From positions 1 through 64,000 of the IMG/VR virus record IMGVR_UViG_3300005529_000001: a DNA stretch of 64,000 nucleotides; one strand, written 5' to 3'. The notes beneath the pieces are model-generated. The model made no database searches, was not told the DNA's origin, and saw nothing but the letters and a program-made list of their open reading frames with translations. Of the stretch, positions 5,469 to 37,636 are shown piece by piece. The position numbers were made by a program, and so were the translations under genes. Position 1 is the first letter of the stretch; each line of letters starts with the position of its first letter.

Positions 5469-5595
5469 CACACGTTCACCTACAGTCCATCGCGGGAATT
5501 GCACCCGCACCCCCTGGATTTCAGCCAAGTGTGCTACTGTTACTACCAGACGGCTCAGAGACCCGCTCCGTTAGGAGCTTTGGGTTACTGGTGTG
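5469..5595 (-). ncRNA. AGUA/GAA module copy D carrying a CCA-less tRNA-Phe(GAA)-like body (5484-5555)
   Basis: CACAC-C-AGUA-ACC...GGU-GAA-C-GUGUG; inner CTTGG-CTGAAAT-CCAGG and T-arm GCGGG-TGCAATT-CCCGC. Confidence 0.75.
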
Positions 5596-5669
5596 GTCTC
5601 ACCGGCGAGAGTCGAACTCGCGGCTTTCACCTTCGGAGGGTGACACTCTGTCCACTGAGTTACGGTGAG
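5594..5669 (-). tRNA. trnR: tRNA-Arg(CCG)
   Basis: TCACC-CTCCGAA-GGTGA. Confidence 0.92.
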
Positions 5670-5674
5670 ATGTC

Positions 5675-5758
5675 GGGATCTTTCAACTGTTGCCGGACTC
5701 GCACCGGTTGAGCGACTCTTTGATGCGCCTCGTCTTAGTTGATCGTTTACTGGATCCC
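5675..5758 (-). ncRNA. AGUA/GAA module copy P (AAC/GUU variant)
   Basis: GGGAUC-C-AGUA-AAC...GUU-GAA-A-GAUCCC; T-arm-like CCGG-TGCGAGT-CCGG. Confidence 0.7.
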
Positions 5759-5762
5759 TGTT

Positions 5763-5839
5763 TGGTCTCCGAGGAGGGATTCGAACCCCCGACGTCCGCC
5801 TTAGGAGTGCGGCATTCTGTCCAGCTGAATTACTCGGAG
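5763..5839 (-). tRNA. trnR: tRNA-Arg(CCT)
   Basis: loop CTCCTAA, A.G mismatch at 31-39. Confidence 0.85.
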
Positions 5840-5915
5840 AGTTTTGCCGGATCATCGCCCGGTCGCTTACTCTTAATGTTGTGACCTCTTGTGGAATGGA
5901 TCAACACGTTACCAA

Positions 5916-6000
5916 CATCGCATTTCACATTCACCTATGTGGGTACAAACCACTGCGACGGGCGAACCCGCCATCGGACTTCAGTTGTTACTTGGCGATG
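5916..6000 (-). ncRNA. AGUA/GAA module copy E (ACA/UGU variant)
   Basis: CAUCGC-CA-AGUA-ACA...UGU-GAA-AU-GCGAUG; inner UUCG hairpin; overlaps stop codon of upstream CDS. Confidence 0.65.
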
Positions 6001-6659
6001 TCTTTGATGAAGCGAGGGTAGTGCTCGTCATGGACGGCTTTCAGCTTCGCTTGCAAGTCTTGGAACCTACCCTCAAATGGTTCCAATTTCTCGCTCTTTT
6101 CGAAGATCTTGCCGCCTTCAGTCAGGTATGCTTGGACCTCATCGTAGAAAGTCTTCTCAGTGTAACCCTTAGCGAACAGGACCTCACGCATCAGGTCCAA
6201 CAACTCCGGGTCCGTCATGTGGATGATACCCAGGCACCGGTCGCGGTAGCTGTGGTCAAGGTAGAACATCGCATGTGTCATCTCGTGGACATCAAGCACC
6301 CCATCATCCATGACACCGATCAGATATGCTTCACGAGTCTCCATCTTGATGAGACGGTAGATCGCATACATCAGCTGGTCATACTGGTTTGGGTCCTCTA
6401 GGCCCATGTCAAACACCTGTTTGATGACCTCGACCGGGATGTTGAAACCGCCCCAATCACCCGAGGCATAGCTGAAGTGCCCGTCTTCGCCTTGTTCTTT
6501 TGAGTACCACGTCATGAACTCAGCGATCGTGAACTTCTTGTCATGGTACCGTGGGCTCTCGTAGAACTCCTGGTAGCGCAAGAAAGTCATGCACATCTGG
6601 AACGAGTCGTTGAAACGTAGCTCGTAAACTCCTTCGCGAAGCTTGCTGAATTTGAACAT
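5988..6659 (-). CDS. hypothetical phage protein
   Basis: long ORF; start trimmed to MFKFSK. Confidence 0.7.
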   Translation of the reverse strand: MFKFSKLREGVYELRFNDSFQMCMTFLRYQEFYESPRYHDKKFTIAEFMTWYSKEQGEDGHFSYASGDWGGFNIPVEVIKQVFDMGLEDPNQYDQLMYAIYRLIKMETREAYLIGVMDDGVLDVHEMTHAMFYLDHSYRDRCLGIIHMTDPELLDLMREVLFAKGYTEKTFYDEVQAYLTEGGKIFEKSEKLEPFEGRFQDLQAKLKAVHDEHYPRFIKDIAK

Positions 6660-6669
6660 GGTTGTAGGT

Positions 6670-6784
6670 GATTGACGTTCACCTCTTCGGAGTTTCACCG
6701 ACTTCGCGTACTCACCCAGCCTTAAAAGCGACCGAGCTTTCGACTGCCGATCCCGGCGAGTTTATGTTGGTTACTCTGTCAATC
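6670..6784 (-). ncRNA. AGUA/GAA module copy F
   Basis: GAUUGAC-AG-AGUA-ACC...GGU-GAA-C-GUCAAUC; inner ACUCGCC/GGGUGAGU and TCGG-TGAAACT-CCGA. Confidence 0.75.
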
Positions 6785-6868
6785 GTACCGACGAAGGGAT
6801 TCGAACCCCCACGCCCTTGCGGGCACTGCGACCTGAACGCAGCGTGTCTACCGTTCCACCACGTCGGC
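6783..6868 (-). tRNA. trnL: tRNA-Leu(CAG)
   Basis: CTGCG-TTCAGGT-CGCAG, long variable arm. Confidence 0.93.
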
Positions 6869-6883
6869 GTGGCTACACTCTAC

Positions 6884-7312
6884 TTAACCCTCTTCTCGTT
6901 TGCACTCATCACGGACCTCCATGAGGATGCGTCCGAGCCAGTTCGAACCCTTCCCGCGGCAAACGCCCCAGAACGTGTCATTCCACCAGTTGCCCTCAAC
7001 GAGCTTTGCATCACCCGTTGCCAGCAACATCGCTCGGAATAACGGGTTCTTGAACTTCTCCTGGACGAGCTGGCGCATCAGAGCGACTTTTGTCGATTCC
7101 CAATCACGGGGGAGCGAAGCTGCCTTGCCTAATTTCTTAGCTTCTCCAGGCGTCTTGGCGTTCCTAACCAGCTCGTGCCCACTGCCTTCTTTGCCAAACT
7201 TGAAAGCTTGGTATGCGTGTTCGACTGACGGGTAACGTAGACCGTTGACCCAGATCGATGACTCGTGGAAGTTGCTCAAGAAACCGAAGTCACCCCTGAA
7301 GGAGTCAATCAC
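6884..7312 (-). CDS. NADAR family protein
   Basis: FLSNF...YPSVEHAYQAFK...LVEGNWWNDTFWG...GSNWLGRILMEVR. Confidence 0.9.
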   Translation of the reverse strand: MIDSFRGDFGFLSNFHESSIWVNGLRYPSVEHAYQAFKFGKEGSGHELVRNAKTPGEAKKLGKAASLPRDWESTKVALMRQLVQEKFKNPLFRAMLLATGDAKLVEGNWWNDTFWGVCRGKGSNWLGRILMEVRDECKREEG

Positions 7313-7982
7313 CGTCTCCGAGATCAAAGTCTCTGATGTCCGCGGGAGGGTCGGGAGCTGGGGTTGCTGATGGTCCACCTTCGTTGATGCTTCGTTTGAT
7401 GGCAGCGATGAGTTCTTCGGTTTGTCGTTGTTGCTCACGTTCGTCCTCCGGGATGATGTGATTGATCGCGTAATAGAAGAGTGAACTGAAACCGGGAGCG
7501 TACTCTTCGAGCTCCGCTTCGAAGTAATTGCAACGCTTCAGAGCAGCTGCGGCTTCACGTGGGTTGCCCAAGTCAAACCTGACCAATGCAGGTTGGCATC
7601 GCTTGATAACTCGCCAGTATGCCGCGGCAGCATCATCAAACGCGTAAAACGCGCGGTACCAGTGCTTGTCACCCTTGTTGAAGTAGGTGGGTTGGTCTAC
7701 AGATGTCGGCCCAACGTTGCCCAAGTTGTGGTTGTATGATGCTCGCCCAGCTGCGTTCTCAAACGCTACCTGACCCCAGGCCATCGCAAGACGGTTCTTG
7801 CTGGGGTAGCTGCCAAAAACTTTCAGGTGACCGTCACGCAACGCTTGCAGCAGCTCCAGTTGAGTTAGTGGCGTCTTCACCGTTTCTACGTGTTCTCGCT
7901 TGGGTGGCTCCGCTTGTGCAGATCCGAGAGTGCAGCTGAACACAACAGTGATCAACGCGAAGAGCTTCTTCGCCCGGGACAT
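7305..7982 (-). CDS. secreted glucosaminidase/lysozyme-like (GH73-like) protein
   Basis: signal peptide; QVAFEN...NHNLGNV...YRAF...Y pattern. Confidence 0.5.
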   Translation of the reverse strand: MSRAKKLFALITVVFSCTLGSAQAEPPKREHVETVKTPLTQLELLQALRDGHLKVFGSYPSKNRLAMAWGQVAFENAAGRASYNHNLGNVGPTSVDQPTYFNKGDKHWYRAFYAFDDAAAAYWRVIKRCQPALVRFDLGNPREAAAALKRCNYFEAELEEYAPGFSSLFYYAINHIIPEDEREQQRQTEELIAAIKRSINEGGPSATPAPDPPADIRDFDLGDGD

Positions 7983-7999
7983 TGACTCAATCTACTAAG

Positions 8000-8572
8000 T
8001 CAGTCCCGCGTTGTTTCGTCACTTTCACCTGTACATTGTCCTGCAAGCGGGCACGCCGGTAGTTCACAGGTTCCCGTGTTTGGAGAATTGATGTCATCAG
8101 ATGAGGTACACAGCTTCCAAGGCAGCCCAGCCTTGACAACGCGTTTGAGCATGTCAGCAGTCCCACGTGATTCAGCGATGTTGTTGTGAAACGCTAGGAC
8201 CAGATCAATGGGCTCTTCAGGCTTGTTTTCTTCATCAAGCATCTGTTGGTTCCTGATCGGACCCGCTGCACGCTTGTGTTTGGTCCAGTCAGCTGGGTAT
8301 GGCCTGACTTCAAACATGAGTGCTTCAGCAACAGCGGCACAGATGATGTCAGCGCCGACACATGCACCGTGCACGAGGATGGTTCCAGGCCTGAAGCCTT
8401 TCAGCTCTTCAACGACACGGGTGATGTCATTCCAGTTCCTGTCACCAGTGACCAAGATCTTACGAACCTGTTTCTCTGACGGCAGCTTGCGACGTTCTTC
8501 GTCATCACGACGGTCATGGTAACGTCTGTCAGGCTTGTTACGCCTGATCTCGCCAGTCCTTTGCCGAGCCAT
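8000..8572 (-). CDS. SLOG-superfamily (DUF2493-like) protein
   Basis: ILVTGDR...LVHGACVGAD...YPADW...AAGPIRNQQML. Confidence 0.8.
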   Translation of the reverse strand: MARQRTGEIRRNKPDRRYHDRRDDEERRKLPSEKQVRKILVTGDRNWNDITRVVEELKGFRPGTILVHGACVGADIICAAVAEALMFEVRPYPADWTKHKRAAGPIRNQQMLDEENKPEEPIDLVLAFHNNIAESRGTADMLKRVVKAGLPWKLCTSSDDINSPNTGTCELPACPLAGQCTGESDETTRD

Positions 8573-8925
8573 CAGTGGGTTGTCACTGCGTAATGTTCGT
8601 CATGCTGACTGACGTTTTGGACGAGAAGCGTTAGCGTCTCGTTAACCTGAGGCGTGTAAGTCAAGTCACAACCGTCTTTGTTTGACGTGTCACGTTTGAT
8701 GAACTTACCGATCGCCATCCCCTCTTCCTTGCCGTGATAGAGGTAACAGTCCAAGTCACCCCCGTTACCCACGACACGGATGCTTGTCTGGATGTGCGCC
8801 GTGGCTGGGACCTCAACACGGGACAACAGTCCGGGCTTGAGGGTGCCCTCGTAAAAACCGTCTCCCGCAAGTGAAGTCGTGGCTGCCAAAAGAATCGCAG
8901 CCACGACACCTACTACGTGCTTCAT
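8572..8925 (-). CDS. secreted PPC-like beta-sandwich protein
   Basis: signal peptide; GNGGDLDCYLY motif. Confidence 0.55.
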   Translation of the reverse strand: MKHVVGVVAAILLAATTSLAGDGFYEGTLKPGLLSRVEVPATAHIQTSIRVVGNGGDLDCYLYHGKEEGMAIGKFIKRDTSNKDGCDLTYTPQVNETLTLLVQNVSQHDEHYAVTTH

Positions 8926-8928
8926 CGA

Positions 8929-9519
8929 TCACTCCCAGTCACCATTGTACCACCTAGACAGCCTGCTTTTCACGCCCGTTCGGTGATCAGTGACCTGGTC
9001 ATCTTGGGTGCGATACGTGCGAACCTTGTCGCCACGTTGGCCCGTGCCAACTTGCTGTTTACGATCAGTTTCTTTGGCGGTTCGTAATCGCTCTCTGTCA
9101 GCTTCATAGAGTCGAGCTGCAAGGACTTTCATCGCCATCGCTTTGTTTTGGCTTTGGCTTCGTTCATTGTCGATACGAACTTGTAACCCAGTCAACTTGT
9201 GAGTGACAACAACGCAGCTCTCGGTCTTGTTACGTTTCTGGCCACCCGGACCAGATCCGCGGACAGTCTCGATGAGAACGTCCTGGTACGTCAGGGGTTG
9301 GCCACTGACAAAATCAGGATCAAAGACAGCAACGGTTACCGTTGACGTCTGGACCCGACCACGTTTTTCAGTGGGTGGGATCCGTTGCCACCGGTGACCG
9401 CCGCTCTCGTTACAGAACGTCTGTTTGGCTCCTGCACCAGTGAAAGCGGCGATGACCAAACCTGGACGTTCGTCGATTAGTTCGATTTCAAAGACACCTC
9501 CGTGCTGCCACATTGGCAT
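8929..9519 (-). CDS. peptide chain release factor-like protein (RF1-type, N-terminally truncated)
   Basis: ESGGHRWQRIPPTEKRGRVQTST (PxT), GPGGQKRNKT (GGQ), RSQSQNK, RTY. Confidence 0.9.
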   Translation of the reverse strand: MPMWQHGGVFEIELIDERPGLVIAAFTGAGAKQTFCNESGGHRWQRIPPTEKRGRVQTSTVTVAVFDPDFVSGQPLTYQDVLIETVRGSGPGGQKRNKTESCVVVTHKLTGLQVRIDNERSQSQNKAMAMKVLAARLYEADRERLRTAKETDRKQQVGTGQRGDKVRTYRTQDDQVTDHRTGVKSRLSRWYNGDWE

Positions 9520-9566
9520 ACACAGAGAGTTGCTCTTTCACGAGCAGCTTTGCGTCATCGCCGCCC

Positions 9567-10073
9567 TCAGCGGCTCTGATCTCGAGGATGACCGTCTCCA
9601 TTGTCTGTCTCCCCAGCGACCGCTCCGAAGTGCTCGTCCAGGATCATCCTGTAGACACGCCGGTTGAGACCGCTGTGTTGTTTGAAAAACTCGTTATCGT
9701 CTCCCGCGAAGATCTTGAGCAATGCGCTCGCGACGCCGGGAGACCTGCTCAGGCCTGCATCACAGTGAATGATGATCCGGCTTGCGATGGGGTGAGCCGC
9801 AACAAAAGCGAGGATCGCTTTCGCGTGGTGCGGCTGGAACATCAATCGCTCGACGTCTTCTCTGACAACACGTTCAGGTTGTGTTCCACCAACCCGAGTG
9901 TCCCAGACACGATCGATGTCGTAGAACTGGAGCTGCAAGACGCCCAAGGTGTTGCTGTTGGTCGGGAGCCTAGCGGGTCCGTCTTCTTTGGGGGTGCTGA
10001 TTGAGATGAAAACGTGCGGAACCTTGTGTTCCACGGTCTCTGCAAGCTGTCTGTTATAAACGATGACGTCCAT
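9567..10073 (-). CDS. Cys-based (tyrosine/dual-specificity) phosphatase-like protein
   Basis: HCDAGLSRS CX5R loop; FYDID acid loop. Confidence 0.8.
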   Translation of the reverse strand: MDVIVYNRQLAETVEHKVPHVFISISTPKEDGPARLPTNSNTLGVLQLQFYDIDRVWDTRVGGTQPERVVREDVERLMFQPHHAKAILAFVAAHPIASRIIIHCDAGLSRSPGVASALLKIFAGDDNEFFKQHSGLNRRVYRMILDEHFGAVAGETDNGDGHPRDQSR

Positions 10074-10112
10074 GAGACATCCTACCCCTCAGGCGATGTT
10101 GAATTCACTCTG

Positions 10113-10190
10113 CGGTACCGGGAGTGGGACTCGAACCCACGGTGTGTCGGCTTATGAGACCGATGCTGTTGCCACTGAAGCCACCCCGGC
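10113..10190 (-). tRNA. tRNA-CAT (elongator Met or Ile2)
   Basis: TCGGT-CTCATAA-GCCGA. Confidence 0.85.
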
Positions 10191-10193
10191 GTA

Positions 10194-10279
10194 CCCAACG
10201 AGTTTTCACTTTCTCACTACCCGGTACTCCCGCCGGGTTCGCAGCTGCCGCTACCTGCGGCAAGTTACTGTTCGCTGGG
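10194..10279 (-). ncRNA. AGUA/GAA module copy O (ACUU/AAGU variant)
   Basis: CCCAGCGA-AC-AGUA-ACUU...AAGU-GAA-AAC-UCGUUGGG; two inner hairpins. Confidence 0.75.
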
Positions 10280-10353
10280 TGCTGACGGCGGGAGTCGAAC
10301 CCGCAGAACCCTGCTTCTAAGGCAGGTATGTATGCCTGTTCCATCACGTCAGC
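10277..10353 (-). tRNA. trnL: tRNA-Leu(TAG), short variable arm
   Basis: CCTGC-CTTAGAA-GCAGG; 5-nt variable region. Confidence 0.8.
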
Positions 10354-10358
10354 ATTGA

Positions 10359-10436
10359 GAGTGCCCCCGGCCCGATTCGAACGGGCGACCCGCTGCTTCG
10401 AAGGCAGCCGCTCTGAATCCGCTGAGCTACGGGGGC
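10359..10436 (-). tRNA. trnR: tRNA-Arg(TCG)
   Basis: GCTGC-CTTCGAA-GCAGC. Confidence 0.92.
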
Positions 10437-10475
10437 ATATTTCCATTTCGTGCAAGACTATGGTATGGTGGCGTC

Positions 10476-10985
10476 ATGGATACCCACACCAATGGGACCA
10501 ACGGGAAGACCATCCCGACACGGACCAGCCTGGTACCGGTCGAGGTGGAGCTCTCTCCGCGGCCCAACATCGAACGCATCTTCCACCTTGCCTCAGAAGT
10601 TGTCAACATTGAGGCAAAACGTAACGAGGTGATGACTGAGCTGAAAGAGCTCGTTGTCAAGCTCGATGAGACTGACACTATGAGGTTGTTGCTTGCAATG
10701 GCGAAGCAACCGAACATCGCTAGCTCAGCGCTGGCGACCTTGCCAATCTTGGAGGGAGCAAAGACCATCGTCCCACCGCCCATCACCAAAGAGCCCACGT
10801 TGACCGATGAATACAAGGGTCGCATCATGGCTCTGATGGGCGATGGCCGTGAACGCAAGGCCGAAGCGGTCATCAAAGCGCTCAAGGCAAAGAAGCAGAA
10901 ATCGACTGTTTACTTGGCTTTGGGCCAGCTGGTCGGCGAAGGGCAGTTGGTGAAGCCGGCGTTCGCTCACTATCGCAAACGCTAA
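10476..10985 (+). CDS. putative DNA-binding protein (C-terminal winged-helix-like)
   Basis: coherent plus-strand ORF with own -10 (TATGGT) and downstream hairpin. Confidence 0.65.
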   Translation: MDTHTNGTNGKTIPTRTSLVPVEVELSPRPNIERIFHLASEVVNIEAKRNEVMTELKELVVKLDETDTMRLLLAMAKQPNIASSALATLPILEGAKTIVPPPITKEPTLTDEYKGRIMALMGDGRERKAEAVIKALKAKKQKSTVYLALGQLVGEGQLVKPAFAHYRKR

Positions 10986-10994
10986 AACTTGGTG

Positions 10995-11025
10995 GGGGCC
11001 CAGAGAGATCATCCCTGGGCCCCCG
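10995..11025. terminator. GC-rich hairpin between convergent units
   Basis: GGGGCCCAG...CTGGGCCCC inverted repeat. Confidence 0.55.
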
Positions 11026-11029
11026 TCGA

Positions 11030-11384
11030 GGGAGGAGGGCCGATAAGCCGGGTTCTGTCGTTGGGCGATCATTCCTCTGGGATGCATGTTGCCATGCACC
11101 TCAAGCAGCAACCCGGGAACATCGGGCGAGCAGCCCTCAACCGTTCCCTGTTTGCCTTGCTGCGGATGGGGTTTGCCACAAGGGACTGTCACCAGCCCTG
11201 TCGGGGTCTCTTACACCTCGGTTTCGCCCTTGCCTGATCGAGGGGTTGTTTCCCCAAGCCATCGGCGGTCTGTTTTCTGTTGCACTGTTCCGTCGCGTCG
11301 CCGCGCCTGGCCGTTAGCCAGCATCCTGCTCTGTGCAGCCCGGACTTTCCTCTGCATGAATGCAGCGATTCGCCTGGCCTTCCC
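11030..11384 (-). ncRNA. rnpB: RNase P RNA, type A
   Basis: GAGGAAAGTCCGGGC, AGTGCAACAGAAA, ACAGAACCCGGCTTATCGGCC hallmark segments. Confidence 0.97.
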
Positions 11385-11385
11385 A

Positions 11386-11472
11386 CGGTGCCAACGGAGG
11401 GATTCGAACCCTCACGTCCTTTCGGACCCCTGCTTCTGAGGCAAGGAAGTCTGCCAGTTTCATCACGTTGGC
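11386..11472 (-). tRNA. trnL: tRNA-Leu(CAG)
   Basis: CTTGC-CTCAGAA-GCAGG, long variable arm. Confidence 0.92.
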
Positions 11473-11522
11473 GTTGGGGGTGAATCCGGTTACCTCACCC
11501 AGGGGTATTGCTACGCCGGTTG

Positions 11523-11876
11523 TTACACGTCCACGGCAATTTTCATGGCCTTGCCTCGAGCCAGCTGGAGCTTGTTGATGAAGACTAGCATGTTGACCAC
11601 ACCGATGTCGCCCATGGGCCAGCGCACCATCTCGTTCTGTAGCTTCTCTGATAGCTCTTCGCTCAAGCCGGTGTCGGCTCTGTTCCCGTCAACGACGACC
11701 GCGACGTCAATGTCGCTGTCAGCGCGGAAGAAATTCTTGTCGATGACGCTGCCCACGATGTAGACTTCCCGGCATGGGAGACCCAACACATCAGCCGCTG
11801 TGTTCCTGATGAAGCCGGCATTCTGCTTCAGGATCTCGATCGCTTCTTGCCGGTACTCTTCGAGTTCAGGGTCCAT
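11523..11876 (-). CDS. minimal nucleotidyltransferase (Pol beta superfamily)
   Basis: VYIVGSV...DSDIDVAVVV (GS...DxD). Confidence 0.8.
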   Translation of the reverse strand: MDPELEEYRQEAIEILKQNAGFIRNTAADVLGLPCREVYIVGSVIDKNFFRADSDIDVAVVVDGNRADTGLSEELSEKLQNEMVRWPMGDIGVVNMLVFINKLQLARGKAMKIAVDV

Positions 11877-11962
11877 CGTGCTAACAGGGGGAGTCGAACC
11901 CCCACGCCCTTTCGGGCACCAGGCTCTCGACCTGGCGCGTCTGCCAATTCCGCCATGTTAGC
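11876..11962 (-). tRNA. trnL: tRNA-Leu(GAG)
   Basis: CCAGG-TCGAGAG-CCTGG (C33). Confidence 0.9.
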
Positions 11963-11965
11963 GTG

Positions 11966-12190
11966 TCATCCGAGCGAGTCTCTGTAAATAGCGCAGTGAT
12001 GAAGGAACTCGTCCTTCGGGGGTGCGCAAGGCTCTGGAACCACCCGCTCGGGTAGCAGGTTCCACAGCTCAGGCACCCACCAACAAAGGTTGTGCCCTTT
12101 CGCATCACGGTGCTGGCGGATGCCAGCGCGCAAGCGCTTGATTTCTTCGATCAGGTCCTCTCGGGACTTGGTTTCGAGATCGTCATCCAT
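11966..12190 (-). CDS. hypothetical protein
   Basis: ATG ORF filling inter-tRNA gap. Confidence 0.6.
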   Translation of the reverse strand: MDDDLETKSREDLIEEIKRLRAGIRQHRDAKGHNLCWWVPELWNLLPERVVPEPCAPPKDEFLHHCAIYRDSLG

Positions 12191-12265
12191 GGTGCCCCCA
12201 GCGGGATTCGAACCCGCGTTTTCTGGGTGAAGGCCAAACGTCCTGGGCCACTAGACGATGGGGGC
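12190..12265 (-). tRNA. trnE: tRNA-Glu(TTC)
   Basis: Glu-type D arm; loop CCTTCAC (C33). Confidence 0.85.
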
Positions 12266-12339
12266 GTGCATGTGTTGAGGTTCTACGGTGCACAACGTAG
12301 CTCGCTTTTGGCATAAAGCCTAAGGATCAATCCAGCACA

Positions 12340-12416
12340 TGGGGTGTCCGACGGGATTCGAACCCGCGTAAGTACGGTCACAGCGTACCCCCTGAGGCCA
12401 CTCGGGTACGGACACC
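12340..12416 (-). tRNA. trnH: tRNA-His(GTG)
   Basis: G-1:C73; GTACG-CTGTGAC-CGTAC. Confidence 0.92.
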
Positions 12417-12592
12417 ATGCGTGCCCGTTTGGGCACAACGTTCAGTTCTTGGTTGATTTCTTGTTATCTTTGTGGTGCTTGTCATGGTGGTTCTTGTAGA
12501 GAACCGCACCGGCGATGACAGCGATCACGATTGCAGCGAGCTTGAGCTTGTTCTTCATTTTCATATCGTACACCGTGTTGCACCAAAGTGCA

Positions 12593-12667
12593 AGGAGCTG
12601 AGGAAGGGACTTGAACCCTCAATCGCCTGCTTACAAGACAGGAGCATTGCCATTATGCTACCTCAGC
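12593..12667 (-). tRNA. trnT: tRNA-Thr(TGT)
   Basis: CCTGT-CTTGTAA-GCAGG. Confidence 0.9.
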
Positions 12668-12670
12668 AAA

Positions 12671-12764
12671 ACCCGTTCACCTGCTGCCCTGGAGTTGAAC
12701 TCAGGCCCTCCCGCTTGGACGGCGGGCGTGCGACCGTTACACTTGCACATGTGGTTACTTGGAT
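12671..12764 (-). ncRNA. AGUA/GAA module copy G carrying a degenerate tRNA body (loop CGTCCAA)
   Basis: AUCC-A-AGUA-ACC...GGU-GAA-C-GGGU; CCCGC/GCGGG arm plus TTCAACT T-loop. Confidence 0.7.
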
Positions 12765-12850
12765 GGTGATCTCCGTGGGACTCGAACCCACACGCCCTTG
12801 CGGGCACCGGATTTTAAATCCAGCGCGTATGCCGATTTCGCCAGGAGACC
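12764..12850 (-). tRNA. trnL: tRNA-Leu(TAA)
   Basis: CTGGA-TTTAAAA-TCCGG. Confidence 0.92.
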
Positions 12851-12851
12851 G

Positions 12852-12926
12852 TGGAGCGAGCGGCGGGATTCGAACCCGCGTTTCCAGGCTGGCGACCTGG
12901 CACATGTGCCTCTCTGTCACACTCGC
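12852..12926 (-). tRNA. trnG: tRNA-Gly(GCC), second copy
   Basis: CCAGG-TCGCCAG-CCTGG (C33), U73. Confidence 0.85.
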
Positions 12927-12930
12927 ATTT

Positions 12931-13040
12931 GCTTTCACCTTCAAGGAATTGAACCTCCACCTCCCAGCTTCGCGCCAGGTGTTCTCCCATTAAACTACAG
13001 TTAGCTTCTCAGCCAACTGGGAACTGGTTACTCACGGAGC
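12931..13040 (-). ncRNA. AGUA/GAA module copy H carrying a tRNA body lacking the 3' acceptor strand
   Basis: AGUA-ACC...D-arm TAGTTTAATGGGAGAA, loop CGCGAAG, GGTTCAATTCC, then GGU-GAA. Confidence 0.65.
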
Positions 13041-13110
13041 TGGCCACGGGAGTCGAACCCGTCATCTCGTCCGTACCAAGGACGCGTGTTCCCACGCCTA
13101 CTCGGCCAGC
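13035..13110 (-). tRNA. trnT: tRNA-Thr(GGT)
   Basis: CGTCC-TTGGTAC-GGACG. Confidence 0.88.
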
Positions 13111-13113
13111 AAT

Positions 13114-13234
13114 CTTCGTTCACCTGCGTCGAAAGGGACTCGAACCCTTACCCAAGCTCAACACTTGGAAACCGGTTTTGTGCCGGCCGCGTATGCCTGT
13201 TTTTCCGCCATCGACCTATGTTGGTTACTGGAAG
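13114..13234 (-). ncRNA. AGUA/GAA module copy I carrying a CCA-less tRNA-Leu(CAA)-like body
   Basis: CUUC-C-AGUA-ACC...GGU-GAA-C-GAAG; GCCGG-CACAAAA-CCGGT, long variable arm, GGTTCGAGTCC. Confidence 0.72.
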
Positions 13235-13310
13235 GGAGTCGACGGCAGGATTCGGACCTGCGAATACCTGGGTTGCAGCCAGGCCCCTTGAACCGCTTGG
13301 GTACGTCGAC
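13234..13310 (-). tRNA. trnC: tRNA-Cys(GCA)
   Basis: CCTGG-CTGCAAC-CCAGG, U73. Confidence 0.9.
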
Positions 13311-13311
13311 G

Positions 13312-13650
13312 TCACATGCCGCCGCCCATTCCGTGGCGGCCGTTGTCGTTGTTGCTCTTGTTGTTGTAGTTCACCCCGCGTGCTTTGCCGTAGCTTGGCA
13401 CCGGGGGCTTGCTATCATCGAGATCGTCTTGGAGAGGCTTGTCTTCAGCGTCGTCTCGTGAGTTGGGACCCTTTGGCAACCGGAGGTTGCCCAGGTCAGT
13501 CGGGTGAGTGTCAGCCATCTTGTCGGGCACTCCATAGACGTGCTCGACCTTTTCTTTTGGCCAACCGTAGACTGCCTTTGCAGCCTCCCTGATTGTCTCA
13601 CGGAGCTCACCGAGACGGATCTTCACGTCTGTAAGTATCTCTGTCCCCAC
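13312..13650 (-). CDS. hypothetical protein with VKIRLGELRETIREA motif
   Basis: ORF fills gap between tRNAs; start overlaps tRNA-Phe 3' end. Confidence 0.55.
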   Translation of the reverse strand: MGTEILTDVKIRLGELRETIREAAKAVYGWPKEKVEHVYGVPDKMADTHPTDLGNLRLPKGPNSRDDAEDKPLQDDLDDSKPPVPSYGKARGVNYNNKSNNDNGRHGMGGGM

Positions 13651-13714
13651 GGCCGGACTCGAACCGGCACCTCCTGGGCTTCAACCAGGCGCTCGACCAT
13701 CGAGCTGCAAGGGG
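13641..13714 (-). tRNA. trnF: tRNA-Phe(GAA), acceptor mismatch
   Basis: CCTGG-TTGAAGC-CCAGG. Confidence 0.75.
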
Positions 13715-13788
13715 GTGGCCTGGGTCGGGATCGAACCGACATCTTACGGGTTTCAACCGTACGCTAAGACCACATCAGCTACCAGGCC
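13713..13788 (-). tRNA. trnF: tRNA-Phe(GAA)
   Basis: TACGG-TTGAAAC-CCGTA. Confidence 0.88.
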
Positions 13789-13797
13789 ATGTGTGGT

Positions 13798-13874
13798 TGG
13801 GGTGACCGGTGGGAATCGAACCCACGTTGACGCATTCACAGTGCGCCCTCTGAAGACCTCTCGAGTACGGCCAC
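13798..13874 (-). tRNA. trnH: tRNA-His(GTG), second copy
   Basis: CGCA-CTGTGAA-TGCG, G-1. Confidence 0.85.
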
Positions 13875-13950
13875 AGTCAGAGACCCCGGAATCGAACCGG
13901 GCCTGCGTCTGGCTCCAAACCAGCTAGGGCGCCTCCTCCCCATGTCTCTG
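13875..13950 (-). tRNA. trnP: tRNA-Pro(TGG), atypical D arm
   Basis: C1:G72, CTGG-TTTGGAG-CCAG. Confidence 0.65.
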
Positions 13951-14022
13951 GAGCTGGCGAAGGGATTCGAACCCTCACAGGCCTGCTTACGACGCAGGAG
14001 CCCACCGTTGGGCGACACCAGC
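13949..14022 (-). tRNA. trnT: tRNA-Thr(CGT)
   Basis: CCTGC-GTCGTAA-GCAGG. Confidence 0.88.
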
Positions 14023-14025
14023 AAT

Positions 14026-14142
14026 CACACGATCTGAGGACTCGAACCTCACCTCCCCTTGCATGCCGGGCAACCCGCCCATGTACGATTCGAACGTACC
14101 AACAACTAGACGGGGCACATGCACCAGCGCACCCATCGCGTG
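14026..14142 (-). ncRNA. tRNA-like RNA with two T-arms
   Basis: GTACG-TTCGAAT-CGTAC and TGAGG-TTCGAGT-CCTCA inside an 8-bp terminal helix. Confidence 0.65.
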
Positions 14143-14215
14143 GTCAGGGTGGTGGGACTCGAACCCACGGCCTCGTCCATCCGAGGGACGCCGTCTGCCA
14201 CTGACTTACACCCTG
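14141..14215 (-). tRNA. trnP: tRNA-Pro(CGG)
   Basis: CGTCC-CTCGGAT-GGACG. Confidence 0.9.
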
Positions 14216-14219
14216 AAAT

Positions 14220-14530
14220 CATCGACCGTCCGATCGCCTCGGCGAGGATATCACCCCTCACACCTGCTCACGTCAGTCACGTTGTTCCGTCACAAGGCTC
14301 AGCAGCTAGCTAGGCCGCCTCAACACCCTGGCGGGAGTTTACCCGCATGCGCTGTTGCTCTGATCGCCGTAAGGCAGCGCACCGTCTTTCCCCCGAATAA
14401 GGAACTGTCTGATCGGAGTACGGACGACGTTACGTTTCCGCGTGCATCGGACCTGACCAGCTCCCGTTGCCAGTGCCTTTCCCCGAGCCAGGGATGGGCT
14501 TTCAGCCACGTGACGGTAGGACGGTCGATG
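14220..14530 (-). ncRNA. unassigned ~310-nt structured RNA
   Basis: 12-bp perfect terminal helix CATCGACCGTCC/GGACGGTCGATG plus several internal helices and GNRA-type loops. Confidence 0.65.
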
Positions 14531-14607
14531 GTCAGCGTAAGAGGATTCGAACCTCCGACCTCGTGCACCCCAAGCACGCGCTCTAAACCAGGCTGAGCTA
14601 TACGCTG
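14529..14607 (-). tRNA. trnP: tRNA-Pro(GGG)
   Basis: CGTGC-TTGGGGT-GCACG. Confidence 0.93.
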
Positions 14608-14734
14608 ATACGTTCTTCACAGTCTCCACCTCAGTAGGCGTCAGCCAAACACCGTGAGGTGGGCCGCTCCAGACGCTTCTTCGGGTATTCCCTTAGAGAG
14701 GCGTCAAACCTGAGGAACGCAGAGTCTGTTTGTT

Positions 14735-14810
14735 TCGTGGGAAAGGAGGGACTCGGACCCTCGATCTTCTCCGTGTGAGAGAGCTGTTCTTGCCGCTGAA
14801 CTACATTCCC
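14735..14810 (-). tRNA. trnV: tRNA-Val(CAC)
   Basis: CTCT-CTCACAC-GGAG. Confidence 0.82.
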
Positions 14811-14833
14811 GAAGATTGAAGCCTCCTTGGCTT

Positions 14834-14910
14834 CCGTCGGAGCGGTCGGATTTGAACCGACAACATCTTGCACCCAAAGCAAGTGCACTACCGGATTGTG
14901 CTACGCTCCG
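14834..14910 (-). tRNA. trnP: tRNA-Pro(TGG)
   Basis: CTTGC-TTTGGGT-GCAAG. Confidence 0.92.
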
Positions 14911-15101
14911 TTTTTCTGTCTTCTGCCGGGCGTCTCTGCCGGCTTGCCGTTTTCAACCCCTATGGGGGCACGGCAATCGAAACGGCAGCACTCCTGTGGT
15001 AGACGTGAGGCCGCCGACGCTTGAGCGCCGTGGTTCACTTCTGCCTAATAGGATGCTCGACATCATGACGAATGATCTCGTTTCGTTTGTTCGGCTTTCG
15101 C

Positions 15102-35611: not shown

Positions 35612-35685
35612 TGGTTGGGGCGGAGGGATTCGAACCCCCGTAAGCTGATTCAAAGTCAGCGGTCCTGCCGTTGGACGACACCCCA
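35612..35685 (-). tRNA. trnQ: tRNA-Gln(TTG)
   Basis: GCTGA-CTTTGAA-TCAGC. Confidence 0.93.
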
Positions 35686-35713
35686 ATAGAGAGTAACAAG
35701 CTGCGTTCCGTGT

Positions 35714-35785
35714 TGGTTGCTCCGACTGGACTCGAACCAGTGGCCCCCGCTCCATGGTAACGGGTGTCCGCCGATATGCGGAGCA
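35714..35785 (-). tRNA. atypical tRNA-like RNA, reduced D arm, CAT centred in loop
   Basis: 7-bp acceptor plus ACCA, canonical T arm, CCCGTT-ACCATGG-AGCGGG. Confidence 0.55.
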
Positions 35786-35787
35786 AT

Positions 35788-35883
35788 GCGTCATGTCGAA
35801 CGGAATCGAACCGTTGCCCGGGTAGCAGCCGCGAGCCTTCACAGGATTCTGTGTTTTTCCCAGTGCTTTCCTCGAACGACATG
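35788..35883 (-). ncRNA. tRNA-like RNA with 4-nt anticodon loop
   Basis: CATGTCG/CGACATG acceptor, CACAG-AATC-CTGTG, T arm AACGG-TTCGATT-CCGTT. Confidence 0.55.
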
Positions 35884-35886
35884 ACT

Positions 35887-35961
35887 TGGCAGGGGCGCAG
35901 GGACTCGAACCCTGGTAGCGAGTTTTGGAGGCTCGCGTCCTAGCCGCTGAACGACACCCCT
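35887..35961 (-). tRNA. trnW: tRNA-Trp(CCA)
   Basis: loop CTCCAAA, G73, C.A mismatch at 31-39. Confidence 0.85.
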
Positions 35962-36053
35962 GTAAAAAGCGCTGGTACATGGGACAACTTGCGTTGATCA
36001 GACGTATTGGTTGTTAGTCAGTCTTCCGACAACACTCACCATGTTTGCCAGCT

Positions 36054-36130
36054 ACGGCACCGTCGACGGGAATCGAACCCGCATTTCCTGGTAGACAGCC
36101 AAGCGACCTAATCCATTGATCGACGACGGT
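36054..36130 (-). tRNA. trnD: tRNA-Asp(GTC)
   Basis: CTTGG-CTGTCTA-CCAGG (U37). Confidence 0.85.
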
Positions 36131-36213
36131 ATTGTATCGCTGTGAGAAGCTACCAACTCCTCGCGAGGCGGTGGGGCTCCCTTGCGCTGGGCGCCCATGT
36201 TACCTTGCAGCGA

Positions 36214-36287
36214 TGGCGGTCCCGAGGAGAATCGAACTCCCGTAATACGCTAGACAGGCGTACGTCCTACCACTGAACGACGAGACC
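36214..36287 (-). tRNA. trnD: tRNA-Asp(GTC), second copy
   Basis: TACGC-CTGTCTA-GCGTA (U37), GCCA. Confidence 0.88.
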
Positions 36288-36375
36288 ATTGGCTCCTCGT
36301 TTACCTCGGCGCTTGCCGCGCGTTCTGGTGTACAGACCATGTTGGCATGGTATCGGACCTGGACTTGTTCCGGAG

Positions 36376-36447
36376 TGGAGCTCACGGGATTTGAACCCGT
36401 AACTTCCAGCTTGCAAAGCTGGCACTCTCCCGTTGAGTTAGAGCCCC
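36376..36447 (-). tRNA. trnA: tRNA-Ala(TGC)
   Basis: G3:U70, CCAGC-TTTGCAA-GCTGG. Confidence 0.92.
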
Positions 36448-36448
36448 G

Positions 36449-36530
36449 TGGAGCAGGAGGGGATCGGACCCTCAATCACGCAGCCTCCGCTGGCGAGCGG
36501 CCTTACCGAGTGACCATCCATTGCTGCCCC
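36449..36530 (-). ncRNA. Ala-acceptor tRNA-like RNA with aberrant anticodon arm
   Basis: GGGGCAG/CTGCTCC-A (G3:U70); CCGCT-CGCC-AGCGG. Confidence 0.55.
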
Positions 36531-36609
36531 GTTGCAGCGTCGGTGGGTTACGTAGCAAATTGCATTCTATAGACGAGGAACTTCAATGATAGAATTGCCA
36601 CCGAGCCTA

Positions 36610-36652
36610 GCACTTCACCTTCTTGTCGGTCCTCTGCGACTGGTTACCGTGC
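36610..36652 (-). ncRNA. AGUA/GAA module copy J (minimal, GGUA variant)
   Basis: GCAC-GGUA-ACC...GUCG/CGAC...GGU-GAA-GUGC. Confidence 0.6.
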
Positions 36653-36654
36653 AG

Positions 36655-36727
36655 TGGAGCACGCGGGACTCGAACCCGCCACCTCAACGTTGCGAACGTT
36701 GCGCTCTCCCAGATGAGCTAGTGCCCC
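36655..36727 (-). tRNA. trnA: tRNA-Ala(CGC)
   Basis: CAACG-TTCGCAA-CGTTG. Confidence 0.92.
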
Positions 36728-36780
36728 GAAAACTCCGGCATGGTGACTGCTCTCGCAGACGATCCCGGAGGGATTATGGT

Positions 36781-36856
36781 TGGCAGCGGGGGATGGAGTT
36801 GGACCACCATTTCCAAGCCTTAGACGCCTGGCGACTTGCTGTTAGTCGACCCCGCT
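36781..36856 (-). tRNA. atypical tRNA with CUA (amber) anticodon, 6-bp anticodon stem
   Basis: CCAGGC-GTCTAAG-GCTTGG; G73-CCA; D loop lacks GG; T loop TCCAACT. Confidence 0.55.
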
Positions 36857-36857
36857 G

Positions 36858-36930
36858 TGGAGCTAGCGGGATTCGAACCCGCCACCTTCTGCATGCCATG
36901 CAGACGCTCTCCCAAATGAGCTATAGCCCC
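36858..36930 (-). tRNA. trnA: tRNA-Ala(GGC)
   Basis: TCTGC-ATGGCAT-GCAGA. Confidence 0.92.
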
Positions 36931-37055
36931 GTGTGCCGGCGGTTACTCTGAGTCTTCACCTTCAGGTTTGCAGCAAAGCACGATGAAACACGCACGCTGT
37001 GTGAATGCATATCGTAGTTGGTCGCTGGTCCTCCTATCCGCGCCGGCGGATCGGA

Positions 37056-37131
37056 TGGTGATCCTGGTGGGACTCGAACCCACGAGTTTCTGCGAGTCAT
37101 GCAGACGATCTGGCCGCTGATCTACAGGATC
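37056..37131 (-). tRNA. trnV: tRNA-Val(GAC), second copy
   Basis: TCTGC-ATGACTC-GCAGA (U37). Confidence 0.85.
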
Positions 37132-37371
37132 GTGGCCGGTCTCTCCCGGCGGTCATAGCGGACGATGTGGTCCGCACGTTTTGTCTTTACCTTTCCTTCC
37201 GCTTGTTGCGGTACTGCCGTCGCCAACAGGGCCGGCACATGTATGCCATCCCCGCGAGCTGTGCAGCGATTTGACACCACTTACACATTCCGCGCCTCCT
37301 TTCGTATGAACGAAAGTGGCTACGGAGGTCTTGAATGATCCATGCAGTGACACCTCTTGTTTGGCAAGGTT

Positions 37372-37449
37372 TGGTTGCGGACACCAGGAGTCGAACCTAG
37401 CTGTTGCTGGGTTATGGGCCCAGCGTGTAAGCCGTTTCACTCGTCCGCA
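37372..37449 (-). tRNA. initiator-like tRNA-fMet(CAT)
   Basis: three G-C pairs CTGGG-CCCATAA-CCCAG; U1:A72; ACCA. Confidence 0.75.
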
Positions 37450-37523
37450 GTGGGTCCGGAGGGCAATGATCCCACACGCTTCCGGTTAAAAGCCGGCTGC
37501 TCTGCCAATTGAGCTACGGACCC
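37449..37523 (-). tRNA. trnK: tRNA-Lys(TTT), atypical T loop
   Basis: CCGG-CTTTTAA-CCGG; T loop ATCATTG. Confidence 0.8.
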
Positions 37524-37529
37524 GTATTA

Positions 37530-37636
37530 CATCGTTCACCTGCCAGGATTCGAACCTCCATGTCCGGCTTGAAAGGCCAGCATCCTACCATTAGATGACG
37601 AGACCTTGCGATCTCGGGGTAAGTGGTTACTTGATG
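37530..37636 (-). ncRNA. AGUA/GAA module copy L carrying a tRNA-Glu(TTC)-like body without 3' acceptor strand
   Basis: CAUC-A-AGUA-ACC...GGU-GAA-C-GAUG; CTGGC-CTTTCAA-GCCGG; GGTTCGAATCC; GCAA hairpin. Confidence 0.75.

What the first reader, a model, noticed from the sequence alone, without database searches (positions are those of the whole stretch)
5469..37636. Module payloads are disarmed tRNA bodies capped by the AGUA/GAA handle instead of CCA
Seen: copy D holds a Phe(GAA)-like cloverleaf, I a Leu(CAA)-like one with long variable arm, L a Glu(UUC)-like one, G a UCC-centred body and H a CGA-centred body. D, G and I have bulged or short acceptor stems, and H and L lack the 3' acceptor strand. 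In all five the sequence runs directly into GGU-GAA with no NCCA. P and F retain a T-arm-like hairpin just 5' of the closing helix. Inference: former tRNA genes were captured into the module and kept their elbow and anticodon surfaces while losing the ability to be charged. That fits decoys for anticodon nucleases or tRNA-binding factors better than decay, since each stays inside an intact handle.
Basis: partly seen in the sequence, partly recalled or inferred. Interest (0 to 1): 0.8.

Follow-up and report, generated by a model that had tools for sequence, protein, structure and literature searches.

The report
Clamp-capped tRNA look-alikes in phage tRNA arrays
A giant phage and its uncultured relatives scatter small RNA elements through their tRNA gene arrays, many of them copies of the phage's own tRNAs whose chargeable end is replaced by a conserved, base-paired clamp; this looks like an undescribed RNA family whose job is still unknown.

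Summary
The window is the start of a complete 369-kb phage genome. It carries 55 tRNA genes and an RNase P RNA, all on the minus strand. About 13-15 elements on that strand share one clamp: an outer helix of 4-6 bp, a non-Watson-Crick pair, AGUA opposite GAA (a bulged-G / loop-E motif), and an inner helix ACC/GGU.

A covariance model of the clamp hits only the tRNA arrays, only on the tRNA strand. It also finds the clamp in at least ten metagenomic relatives. Both helices covary (ACC/GGU to AAC/GUU or ACU/AGU).

Five window copies (D, G, H, I, L), and about 40% of copies overall, carry tRNA-derived bodies. Their T and anticodon stems are as intact as in real tRNAs. Their acceptor stems are always defective or missing. 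An invariant A plus GGU occupy the discriminator and CCA positions.

So "disarmed, not decayed" is supported. The "anticodon-nuclease decoy" idea is not. Anticodon triplets drift between relatives, many copies have no tRNA body, and the clamp is the conserved part.

There is no Rfam match and I found no paper describing it. Function is unknown. My best guess is that these are non-chargeable tRNA mimics released during tRNA processing.

The parts
678..760 (-). Module A: clamp plus a non-tRNA hairpin body. It follows tRNA-Gly(ccc).
   Evidence: Clamp model R1 scores 30.4 bits. An ortholog is present in L005.
838..906 (-). Module B: clamp plus a single hairpin, between tRNA-Gly(tcc) and tRNA-Gly(ccc).
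   Evidence: R1 scores 38.1 bits. The unconstrained MFE fold recovers the clamp. This slot is occupied in L003, L004, L005, L006, L008 and L031 with different bodies, and the L005 ortholog has the AAC/GUU swap.
1878..1953 (-). Module C: clamp plus a small body. It lies 2 nt after tRNA-Gly(gcc), and the encoded CCA lies inside the outer helix.
   Evidence: R1 scores 30.3 bits.
5467..5597 (-). Module D: clamp, then a 5' hairpin, then a tRNA-like body centred on GAA.
   Evidence: R1 scores 24.8 bits and this copy was not in the training set. Rfam tRNA model scores 28.6 bits at 5487-5553. Relaxed ARAGORN calls Phe(gaa) with 5 of 7 acceptor pairs. The 3' half resembles tRNA-Asp at 36056.
5674..5759 (-). 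Module E: clamp with the compensated inner helix AAC/GUU. The body ends in a hairpin with loop UGCGAGU.
   Evidence: R1 scores 34.4 bits.
5922..6000 (-). Module F (degenerate or possible): AGUAACA...GGUGAAU. The stop codon of ORF 5988-6698 lies in its AGUAA.
   Evidence: Pattern and fold only. R1 did not find it, and the third inner pair is A.G.
6670..6783 (-). Probable module after tRNA-Leu(cag), with a 7-bp outer helix.
   Evidence: Pattern scan gives P1 = 7, and the MFE fold closes the ends. It is not among the R1 hits.
10197..10277 (-). Module between tRNA-Leu(tag) and tRNA-Met, with the compensated inner helix ACU/AGU.
   Evidence: R1 scores 16.4 bits, E = 0.07. The same slot is occupied in L004, L005, L008 and L045.
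12668..12767 (-). Module G: clamp plus a cloverleaf-like body centred on UCC.
   Evidence: R1 scores 23.5 bits. It has a T-loop motif. The anticodon arm is near-identical to tRNA-Val(tac) apart from the triplet. The slot is occupied in G001, L007, L008, L031 and L045.
12926..13040 (-). Module H: clamp, then a 5' hairpin, then a body centred on CGA. It has no 3' acceptor strand.
   Evidence: R1 scores 22.1 bits. Rfam tRNA model scores 19.7 bits. The T-loop ends 12 nt from GAA.
13111..13237 (-). Module I: clamp plus a tRNA-Leu-like type-II body (CAA, long variable arm, 5-bp acceptor remnant).
   Evidence: R1 scores 21.2 bits. It folds as a cloverleaf inside the clamp. Nine relatives were compared.
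36606..36656 (-). Possible variant module (GGUAACC...GGUGAAG) after tRNA-Ala(cgc).
   Evidence: R1 scores 13.1 bits, E = 0.53. The same GGUA variant occurs in the I slot of L006.
37527..37639 (-). Module L: clamp, then a 5' hairpin, then a body centred on UUC. It has no acceptor stem.
   Evidence: R1 scores 25.2 bits. Rfam tRNA model scores 26.9 bits at 37535-37601. The ortholog in G001 has UUG.
37809..37880 (-). Module M: clamp plus two hairpins (a minimal body).
   Evidence: R1 scores 25.7 bits. The MFE fold recovers the clamp, z = -2.3.
38372..38498 (-). Probable module after tRNA-Lys(ctt), with a T-arm-like hairpin near the 5' end.
   Evidence: R1 scores 13.8 bits. The homolog in G001 is 69% identical in the body, with a compensated T-like stem.

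Best explanation
What it is: a previously undescribed family of small structured RNAs encoded inside the tRNA operons of a clade of uncultured jumbo phages.

Each unit is closed by a clamp. From outside to inside, the clamp is an outer helix P1 (4-6 bp), one non-Watson-Crick pair, a bulged-G / loop-E module (AGUA opposite GAA), and an inner helix P2 (ACC/GGU).

In the tRNA-like units, an invariant A and the GGU occupy the discriminator and CCA positions. The GGU pairs with an ACC placed 3-5 nt upstream of position +1, or further upstream when an extra 5' hairpin is inserted. The bodies are paralogues of the array's own tRNAs, or reduced versions of them.

How it most likely works (inferred, not shown): the units are co-transcribed with the tRNAs. 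The clamp buries both ends, so the body cannot be matured by RNase P or 3' trimming, cannot receive CCA, and cannot be charged. Processing of the neighbouring tRNAs releases it as a discrete, end-protected RNA. That RNA presents a tRNA elbow and arm, or just hairpins, plus an S-turn of a kind that usually docks proteins. It would then act as a non-chargeable tRNA mimic or small RNP scaffold. The partner is unknown.

Shown: the structure, strand and position specificity, covariation, acceptor-specific loss, and conservation across relatives.
Inferred: release, stability and any binding partner.
For: - Specificity: model R1 gives 12-13 hits in the window, all on the tRNA strand and inside the arrays, and none in the other 305 kb of the genome. 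It gives 51 hits in relatives and none in the XacN1 or RsoM2USA arrays. A pattern scan found 93 candidates on the tRNA strand against 4 on the opposite strand.
- Covariation: 82% of cells paired against 65% in shuffles, covariation score 0.52 against 0.20, exceeded by 0 of 500 shuffles, and slid registers pair at about 30%.
- Covariation, unbiased set: in 47 tRNA-tRNA gaps chosen with no pairing demanded, P2 pairs at 94% and 83% with CG to AU/UA swaps. P1 positions -2 to -6 pair well above shuffles. The A before GGU is present in 43 of 47.
- Independence of neighbours: P1 stays with the module when an ORF separates it from the upstream tRNA (L006, L008).
- tRNA ancestry and selective disarming.
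- Redundancy: canonical tRNAs with all five apparent anticodons exist elsewhere in the genome, so the bodies are not needed for decoding.
- Bulged-G modules are commonly protein-binding sites (PMC7247131).
Against: - There are no expression or end-mapping data. RNA libraries only showed tRNA parts of relatives.
- No candidate partner was found. The genome has no Ro60/TROVE, RtcB, RnpA, Thg1 or RNase Z-like gene.
- More than half of the modules have no tRNA-like body, so 'tRNA mimic' cannot be the common denominator. The clamp alone is.
- Individual modules are dispensable. Only 6 of about 15 window modules have a counterpart in the 83%-identity relative, where the flanking tRNAs abut directly.
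- Folding energies are unremarkable, with z from -2.3 to +0.7.
Confidence: 0.45

Rival explanations
1. Cis-acting punctuation. The clamp is a folding insulator or processing signal for the polycistronic tRNA/mRNA precursor. It pairs the trailer of one tRNA with the leader of the next. The body is filler, sometimes a leftover tRNA copy.
For: - The clamp is the conserved part and the bodies vary freely.
- Spacing is tight: 2-13 nt after a tRNA and 6-16 nt before the next.
- P1 often includes the last 1-4 nt of the upstream tRNA, including an encoded CCA.
- Some modules sit at tRNA/ORF borders.
- The phage carries its own RNase P RNA.
Against: - Most tRNA-tRNA and tRNA-ORF junctions have no module, and closely related genomes do without them at the same junctions.
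- The I-slot body keeps its D, T, variable and anticodon arms through compensatory change in nine relatives, which filler would not do.
- P1 is self-contained when an ORF intervenes.
Confidence: 0.28
2. One reading: the bodies are decoys that soak up host anticodon nucleases or other anticodon-reading factors.
For: - Anticodon stem-loops are kept intact.
- A36 and A37 are invariant in the I slot.
- The array neighbourhood holds RNA-repair or conflict genes: RNA ligase, NADAR, YAcAr, PTH2. Jumbo phages are known to invest in tRNA repair (PMC7824862).
- The rapid gain and loss of modules fits an arms race.
Against: - The triplets at positions 34-36 change between syntenic copies and away from the parent tRNA.
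- U33 is lost in some copies.
- Many modules lack an anticodon arm altogether.
- No target nuclease is known for this uncultured host.
Confidence: 0.1
3. The tRNA-like units are unusual precursors of working tRNAs. The clamp is removed, CCA is added by the phage enzyme, and the tRNAs are charged.
For: - GGU lies exactly in the CCA slot after an A73-like base.
- The phage encodes a CCA-adding enzyme.
- Several bodies in L031 and L074 are called as tRNAs by default ARAGORN.
Against: - None of 13 bodies has a perfect acceptor stem, against 584 of 627 canonical tRNAs.
- H and L have no acceptor 3' strand.
- The anticodons are redundant with canonical genes and drift.
- No Thg1-type repair enzyme is encoded.
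Confidence: 0.07
4. Neutral debris: tRNA pseudogenes that happen to be flanked by a short recurring sequence.
For: - tRNA-like remnants without any clamp also occur, for example at 14023-14140.
- Modules are often lost in relatives.
Against: - Both clamp helices covary.
- Damage is confined to the acceptor stem.
- Stems are compensated across relatives.
- The clamp is conserved while tRNAs themselves are only 78% identical between the two closest genomes.
Confidence: 0.03
5. A self-cleaving ribozyme (as HDV-like theta ribozymes sit 3' of phage tRNAs) or a small mobile DNA element.
For: - The position is immediately 3' of tRNAs.
- Presence or absence varies at identical junctions.
- Module C can be drawn as a pseudoknot.
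Against: - No Rfam ribozyme family matches at E up to 1-10.
- The core does not fit the hammerhead or HDV consensus.
- AGUA and GAA are not complementary and the element is strand-specific, so it is not a DNA inverted repeat.
- Bodies are unrelated between slots, unlike copies of a mobile element.
Confidence: 0.04

Closest known systems
Bulged-G (sarcin-ricin / loop E) RNA module
   Same: It has the AGUA/GAA consensus in the same orientation as the sarcin-ricin loop. It is flanked by Watson-Crick helices on both sides and by a non-canonical pair on the outer side.
   Different: Here it is not in rRNA. It closes a small phage RNA with a variable body where the sarcin-ricin loop has its GAGA tetraloop. 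The 3D geometry is not verified.
YrlA / bacterial Y RNAs (tRNA-mimicking ncRNAs, also found in phages; PMC4201824)
   Same: [quoted passage not shown] Both are non-chargeable in most species.
   Different: YrlA is permuted (T, acceptor-like stem, D), binds Ro60 and is encoded next to it. This genome has no TROVE gene and Rfam gives no match. Here the ends are on the acceptor side and the anticodon arm is kept.
Phage T4 stable RNAs species 1 and 2 (rnaC, rnaD) in the T4 tRNA cluster (from my own knowledge)
   Same: They are small stable RNAs of unknown function, co-transcribed and co-processed with phage tRNAs.
   Different: I know of no shared sequence motif, and the comparison could not be run with the tools.
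tRNA pseudogenes and tRNA-like processing signals (mitochondrial tRNA punctuation, mascRNA)
   Same: They are tRNA-derived folds embedded in polycistronic transcripts that are not used for decoding.
   Different: Those are recognised and cut by RNase P and RNase Z at a free acceptor end. Here the acceptor end is sealed by a conserved clamp.
Phage tRNAs that counter tRNA-cleaving defences (T5 tRNAs against PARIS or retron PtuAB; from my own knowledge)
   Same: The theme is the same: phage tRNA arrays as counter-defence.
   Different: Those are functional, chargeable tRNAs with resistant anticodon loops. These units cannot be charged and their anticodons drift.

Membership tests
tRNA (Rfam RF00005 / ARAGORN) | Cloverleaf scoring at or above the family threshold | tested here: not met
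   D scores 28.6, L 26.9 and H 19.7 bits against a gathering score of 29. G and I get no match. ARAGORN at default settings calls none of the five.
tRNA (Rfam RF00005 / ARAGORN) | Seven-bp acceptor stem with a free discriminator and CCA end (encoded or addable) | tested here: not met
   None of 13 callable bodies has 7 of 7 pairs, against 584 of 627 canonical tRNAs. GGU fills the CCA slot and is paired to ACC.
tRNA (Rfam RF00005 / ARAGORN) | T arm with T-loop consensus, and a 5-bp anticodon stem with a 7-nt loop | tested here: met
   30 of 69 modules have GKTYRANNC, against 2.6% of shuffled bodies. Stems are as intact as in canonical tRNAs.
tRNA (Rfam RF00005 / ARAGORN) | Anticodon conserved among orthologues | tested here: not met
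   Triplets differ between syntenic copies.
Bulged-G / loop E module | AGUA opposite GAA between two helices | tested here: met
   These letters were required by the scans, so their constancy is not independent evidence. What is independent is the covarying flanking helices, the non-Watson-Crick -1/+1 pair and the Y-R pair at -2/+2. Syntenic slots chosen by position keep the motif in 8 of 10 genomes.
Bulged-G / loop E module | S-turn backbone with a G.U.A base triple | not testable with these tools
   This needs chemical probing or a solved structure.
YrlA / Y RNA | Match to the family model, and a Ro60 (TROVE) gene in the genome | tested here: not met
   There is no Rfam match. PF05731 is absent from the complete genome.
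Self-cleaving ribozymes (hammerhead, HDV-like/theta, twister, pistol, hatchet) | Match to a family model or core consensus | tested here: not met
   No such Rfam match at E up to 1 over 5300-15300, or up to 10 over the G-H-I and L stretches.
Self-cleaving ribozymes (hammerhead, HDV-like/theta, twister, pistol, hatchet) | Self-cleavage activity | not testable with these tools
   This needs in vitro transcription assays.
Neutral tRNA pseudogene | Even decay of all stems, with no conserved flanks | tested here: not met
   Damage is limited to the acceptor stem. There are compensatory changes. The clamp covaries.
MITE / integron attC-type DNA repeat | Terminal inverted repeats, complementary at the DNA level and found on either strand | tested here: not met
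   AGTA and GAA are not complementary. Counts are 93 on the tRNA strand against 4 on the other strand.

The most novel reading that the evidence does not exclude
The clamp is a dedicated scaffold with which jumbo phages display disarmed tRNA bodies and other hairpins as decoys or sponges for host tRNA-directed factors, such as immune nucleases or modification enzymes. The bulged-G handle would recruit a phage or host protein. The fast turnover of bodies would reflect an arms race.
Probability: 0.15. Interest if true: 0.85.

Novelty: new variant of a known kind. Interest (0 to 1): 0.64.

Why it matters
Phage tRNA arrays are usually read as codon-supply or counter-defence tRNA sets, and the sequences between the tRNAs are ignored. 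Here a sizeable share of that space is a conserved, covarying RNA family. It turns tRNA copies into molecules that keep the tRNA shape but cannot enter translation.

If these RNAs accumulate in infected cells, they would be a new class of viral tRNA mimic with a defined protein-docking handle. They would also be a natural example of an end-sealing RNA scaffold. The family gives a concrete, testable object for asking what else, besides decoding, large phage tRNA clusters do.

Tried and rejected
1. Plus-strand artefact. Rejected: the elements lie in gaps between tRNAs on the tRNA strand.
2. Known families. Rfam at gathering and permissive thresholds gave only sub-threshold tRNA hits.
3. Named phage relatives. 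GenBank phages hold no close relative. XacN1 and RsoM2USA share only tRNA similarity and have no modules.
4. Wide pattern scan (T-loop followed by AGTAACC in IMG/VR). It gave 105 loci. Many are chance hits in unrelated tRNA arrays where AGTAACC is part of another tRNA or precedes a gene.
5. Bacillus phage phiNIT1 (L058, L095). It scored with the model, but the GAA is not kept in the related phage Goe3 and the site overlaps an annotated CDS start, so I treat it as a false positive. L058 was one of the 29 training rows of R1, which is a minor contamination.
6. K-turn, hammerhead, integron attC and Shine-Dalgarno readings of the clamp. Rejected on sequence logic, and because the compensated variants keep pairing rather than keeping those motifs.
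7. Candidate partner genes. TROVE, RtcB, RnpA, Thg1 and RNase Z-like genes are absent.
8. Expression. RNA-library contigs cover only tRNA parts of relatives. Some run into clamp halves, but they cannot be told apart from DNA carry-over.
9. Folding energy z-scores are uninformative.
10. Literature searches found no description.

Full report
**Setting.** The window is the first 64 kb of a complete 369,475-bp virus genome (direct terminal repeats, 56% G+C) assembled from a soil metagenome. ARAGORN finds 55 tRNA genes, all on the minus strand, in two blocks: 765-15179 and 35612-39338. Rfam adds a class A RNase P RNA at 11028-11385 (267 bits) and one more tRNA. Genes interleaved with the tRNAs include PTH2, NADAR, a YAcAr SLOG protein, a short RF-1-like protein, an RNA ligase and a PD-(D/E)XK nuclease. 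No named phage is close. XacN1 and RsoM2USA share only tRNA similarity.

**The module.** Reading the gaps between tRNAs on the tRNA strand shows a recurring frame...AGUAACC - body - GGUGAAC....
- AGTAACC occurs 11 times on this strand in the first 38 kb. It occurs 23 times on both strands of the remaining 331 kb.
- I built a covariance model of the frame alone (R1, from 29 short copies in the window and relatives). It gives 12-13 hits in the window, all on the minus strand and inside the arrays, including D, G, H, I and L, which were not used to build it. It gives no hit in the other 305 kb.
- With two pattern-only candidates, the window holds about 15 copies.

**Relatives.** Homologues of an array-embedded ORF (994-1869) led to metagenomic contigs at 41-85% protein identity, up to 341 kb long. 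A pattern scan added more contigs, up to 394 kb.
- All carry modules only on the tRNA strand, 93 against 4.
- Modules lie typically 2-13 nt after a tRNA and 6-16 nt before the next.
- R1 finds 51 copies in these loci and none in the XacN1 or RsoM2USA arrays.

**The clamp is a real RNA structure.**
- The inner helix covaries: ACC/GGU changes to AAC/GUU (including the L005 orthologue of window copy B) or to ACU/AGU.
- The outer helix pairs positions -2 to -6 with +2 to +6 using all four Watson-Crick types. Slid registers do not pair.
- On alignment A1, 82% of cells pair against 65% in shuffles. The covariation score is 0.52 against 0.20, and 0 of 500 shuffles reach it.
- My scans demanded some pairing, so I repeated the count on 47 tRNA-tRNA gaps chosen only for AGTAA near the start and TGAA near the end. 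The result holds.
- The -1/+1 position is consistently non-canonical (G.A, A.A, A.C, C.C). Position -2/+2 is a Y-R pair. An A immediately before GGU, and a G two positions earlier, are nearly invariant.
- AGUA opposite GAA between helices is the consensus of the bulged-G (sarcin-ricin / loop E) module, a frequent protein-binding site (PMC7247131).
- Folding energy alone is unremarkable.

**The bodies.**
- Window copies D, L and H match the Rfam tRNA model just under threshold: 28.6, 26.9 and 19.7 bits. Copy I folds as a type-II cloverleaf inside the clamp.
- Overall, 30 of 69 distinct modules contain a T-loop consensus, against 2.6% of shuffled bodies. It always lies 10-19 nt from the 3' GAA.
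- Relaxed ARAGORN bodies. T stems pair 4.92 of 5 and anticodon stems 4.60 of 5, as intact as in 627 canonical tRNAs from the same loci (4.93 and 4.85). Acceptor stems pair only 5.4 of 7 and none is perfect, against 6.92 of 7 in canonical tRNAs.
- ARAGORN can only call bodies whose arms are good, so the arm figures are partly selected. The acceptor contrast is not.
- In these bodies the call ends at the invariant A, so GGU sits where CCA belongs. Its partner ACC lies 3-5 nt upstream of +1, or 12-26 nt upstream when a 5' hairpin is inserted.
- Other copies (H, L, several I-slot copies) have no 3' acceptor strand: the T stem runs into G-N-A-GGU.
- The rest of the modules carry only one or two hairpins.

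**Ancestry and constraint.**
- D resembles the array's tRNA-Asp. G carries the anticodon arm of tRNA-Val(tac) with a changed triplet.
- The slot between tRNA-Cys and tRNA-Thr(ggt) holds a tRNA-Leu-like body in the window and in nine relatives examined, eight of which entered the stem-by-stem comparison. The D-arm and T-loop sequences are conserved. Anticodon stems are perfect in 7 of 9 but differ in sequence in each. A36 and A37 are invariant. Position 34-35 varies (CAA, UAA, AAA, CGA, GAA, ACA).
- Between the window and its closest relative, real tRNAs are 78% identical (median) and bodies 57-75%. The clamp core is unchanged in all six shared modules apart from one ACC/GGU to ACU/AGU swap at the H slot and a C-to-A change in the weakly scoring copy at 38372-38498.
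- The apparent anticodons differ at every shared tRNA-like slot.
- Only 6 of about 15 window modules are present in that relative. At the other junctions its tRNAs abut within 1-20 nt.

**Reading.** "Disarmed rather than decayed" is supported by acceptor-specific loss and compensated stems. The decoy-for-anticodon-nucleases idea is not supported, for three reasons: the triplets drift, many copies have no anticodon arm, and what selection holds constant is the clamp. The RNA-repair flavour of the neighbourhood is only circumstantial.

My preferred account is that these are clamp-sealed, non-chargeable RNAs released when their tRNA neighbours are processed. They would expose a tRNA-like body and an S-turn for an unknown partner. 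The main rival is a purely cis-acting folding or processing role for the clamp. I could not separate the two. No transcript data exist for this uncultured clade, and no partner gene stood out.

**Novelty.** I found no Rfam family and no paper describing the element. The nearest concepts are YrlA/Y RNAs and the old T4 "stable RNAs". Tested membership features of tRNA, YrlA, known ribozymes, pseudogenes and DNA repeats are not met. I class it as a new variant of a known kind (phage tRNA-like non-coding RNA), defined by a new clamp.

Noticed in passing
window 11028-11385 (-): A full-length bacterial class A RNase P RNA (267 bits) lies 1 nt downstream of tRNA-Leu(cag). The complete phage genome has no RNase P protein gene (PF00825 absent).
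   Followed up: partly
window 36781-36856 (-) and 8929-9519 (-): A tRNA with anticodon CUA (amber suppressor; ARAGORN labels it Pyl) abuts tRNA-Ala(ggc). A short RF-1-like protein (PCRF and RF-1 domains, 196 aa) is encoded in the array. Relatives carry a UUA 'stop' tRNA. Stop-codon recoding is possible.
   Followed up: no
G000 336639-336792 (+), outside the window: Two tandem tRNA-like genes that ARAGORN reads with a four-base anticodon (ttca). They lie on the opposite strand and far from the arrays.
   Followed up: no
window 35714-35807 (-): A 94-nt ARAGORN call with an undefined anticodon, '???(at)'. G001 has a similar odd call at the syntenic place.
   Followed up: no
window 14023-14140 (-): A spacer with two T-arm-like hairpins (GGUACGUUCGAAUCGUACA and GUGAGGUUCGAGUCCUCAG) but no clamp. 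tRNA-like remnants therefore also exist outside the module family.
   Followed up: no
window 37713-37781 (-): Rfam calls a tRNA here (58.4 bits) that ARAGORN misses. It sits 4 nt from tRNA-Ile(aat).
   Followed up: no
window 5988-6698 (-) and 5922-6000 (-): The stop codon of this array-embedded ORF is the UAA inside the AGUAA of the following module. The ORF is bracketed by two modules.
   Followed up: partly
window 4197-4727, 6884-7438, 8000-8572, 21832-22704, 25771-27201, 37942-38418 (all -): PTH2 peptidyl-tRNA hydrolase, NADAR, YAcAr SLOG, RNA ligase, ATP-dependent DNA ligase and PD-(D/E)XK nuclease genes lie within or between the two tRNA blocks. This looks like an RNA-repair or NAD-conflict neighbourhood.
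   Followed up: partly
window 13035-13112 (tRNA-Thr ggt) in runs X7, X8, X13: Contigs from RNA libraries (rhizosphere, wastewater) match this tRNA at 99-100% and continue into clamp halves (reverse complements GUAGGUGAAA and AGUAACC). Relatives are therefore present there. Transcription cannot be told apart from DNA carry-over.
   Followed up: partly
G000 265088-265457 (-) and 179391-179774 (-), outside the window: The phage also encodes a tmRNA (tag ANDNGFADDVRLAA) and a CCA-adding enzyme.
   Followed up: no
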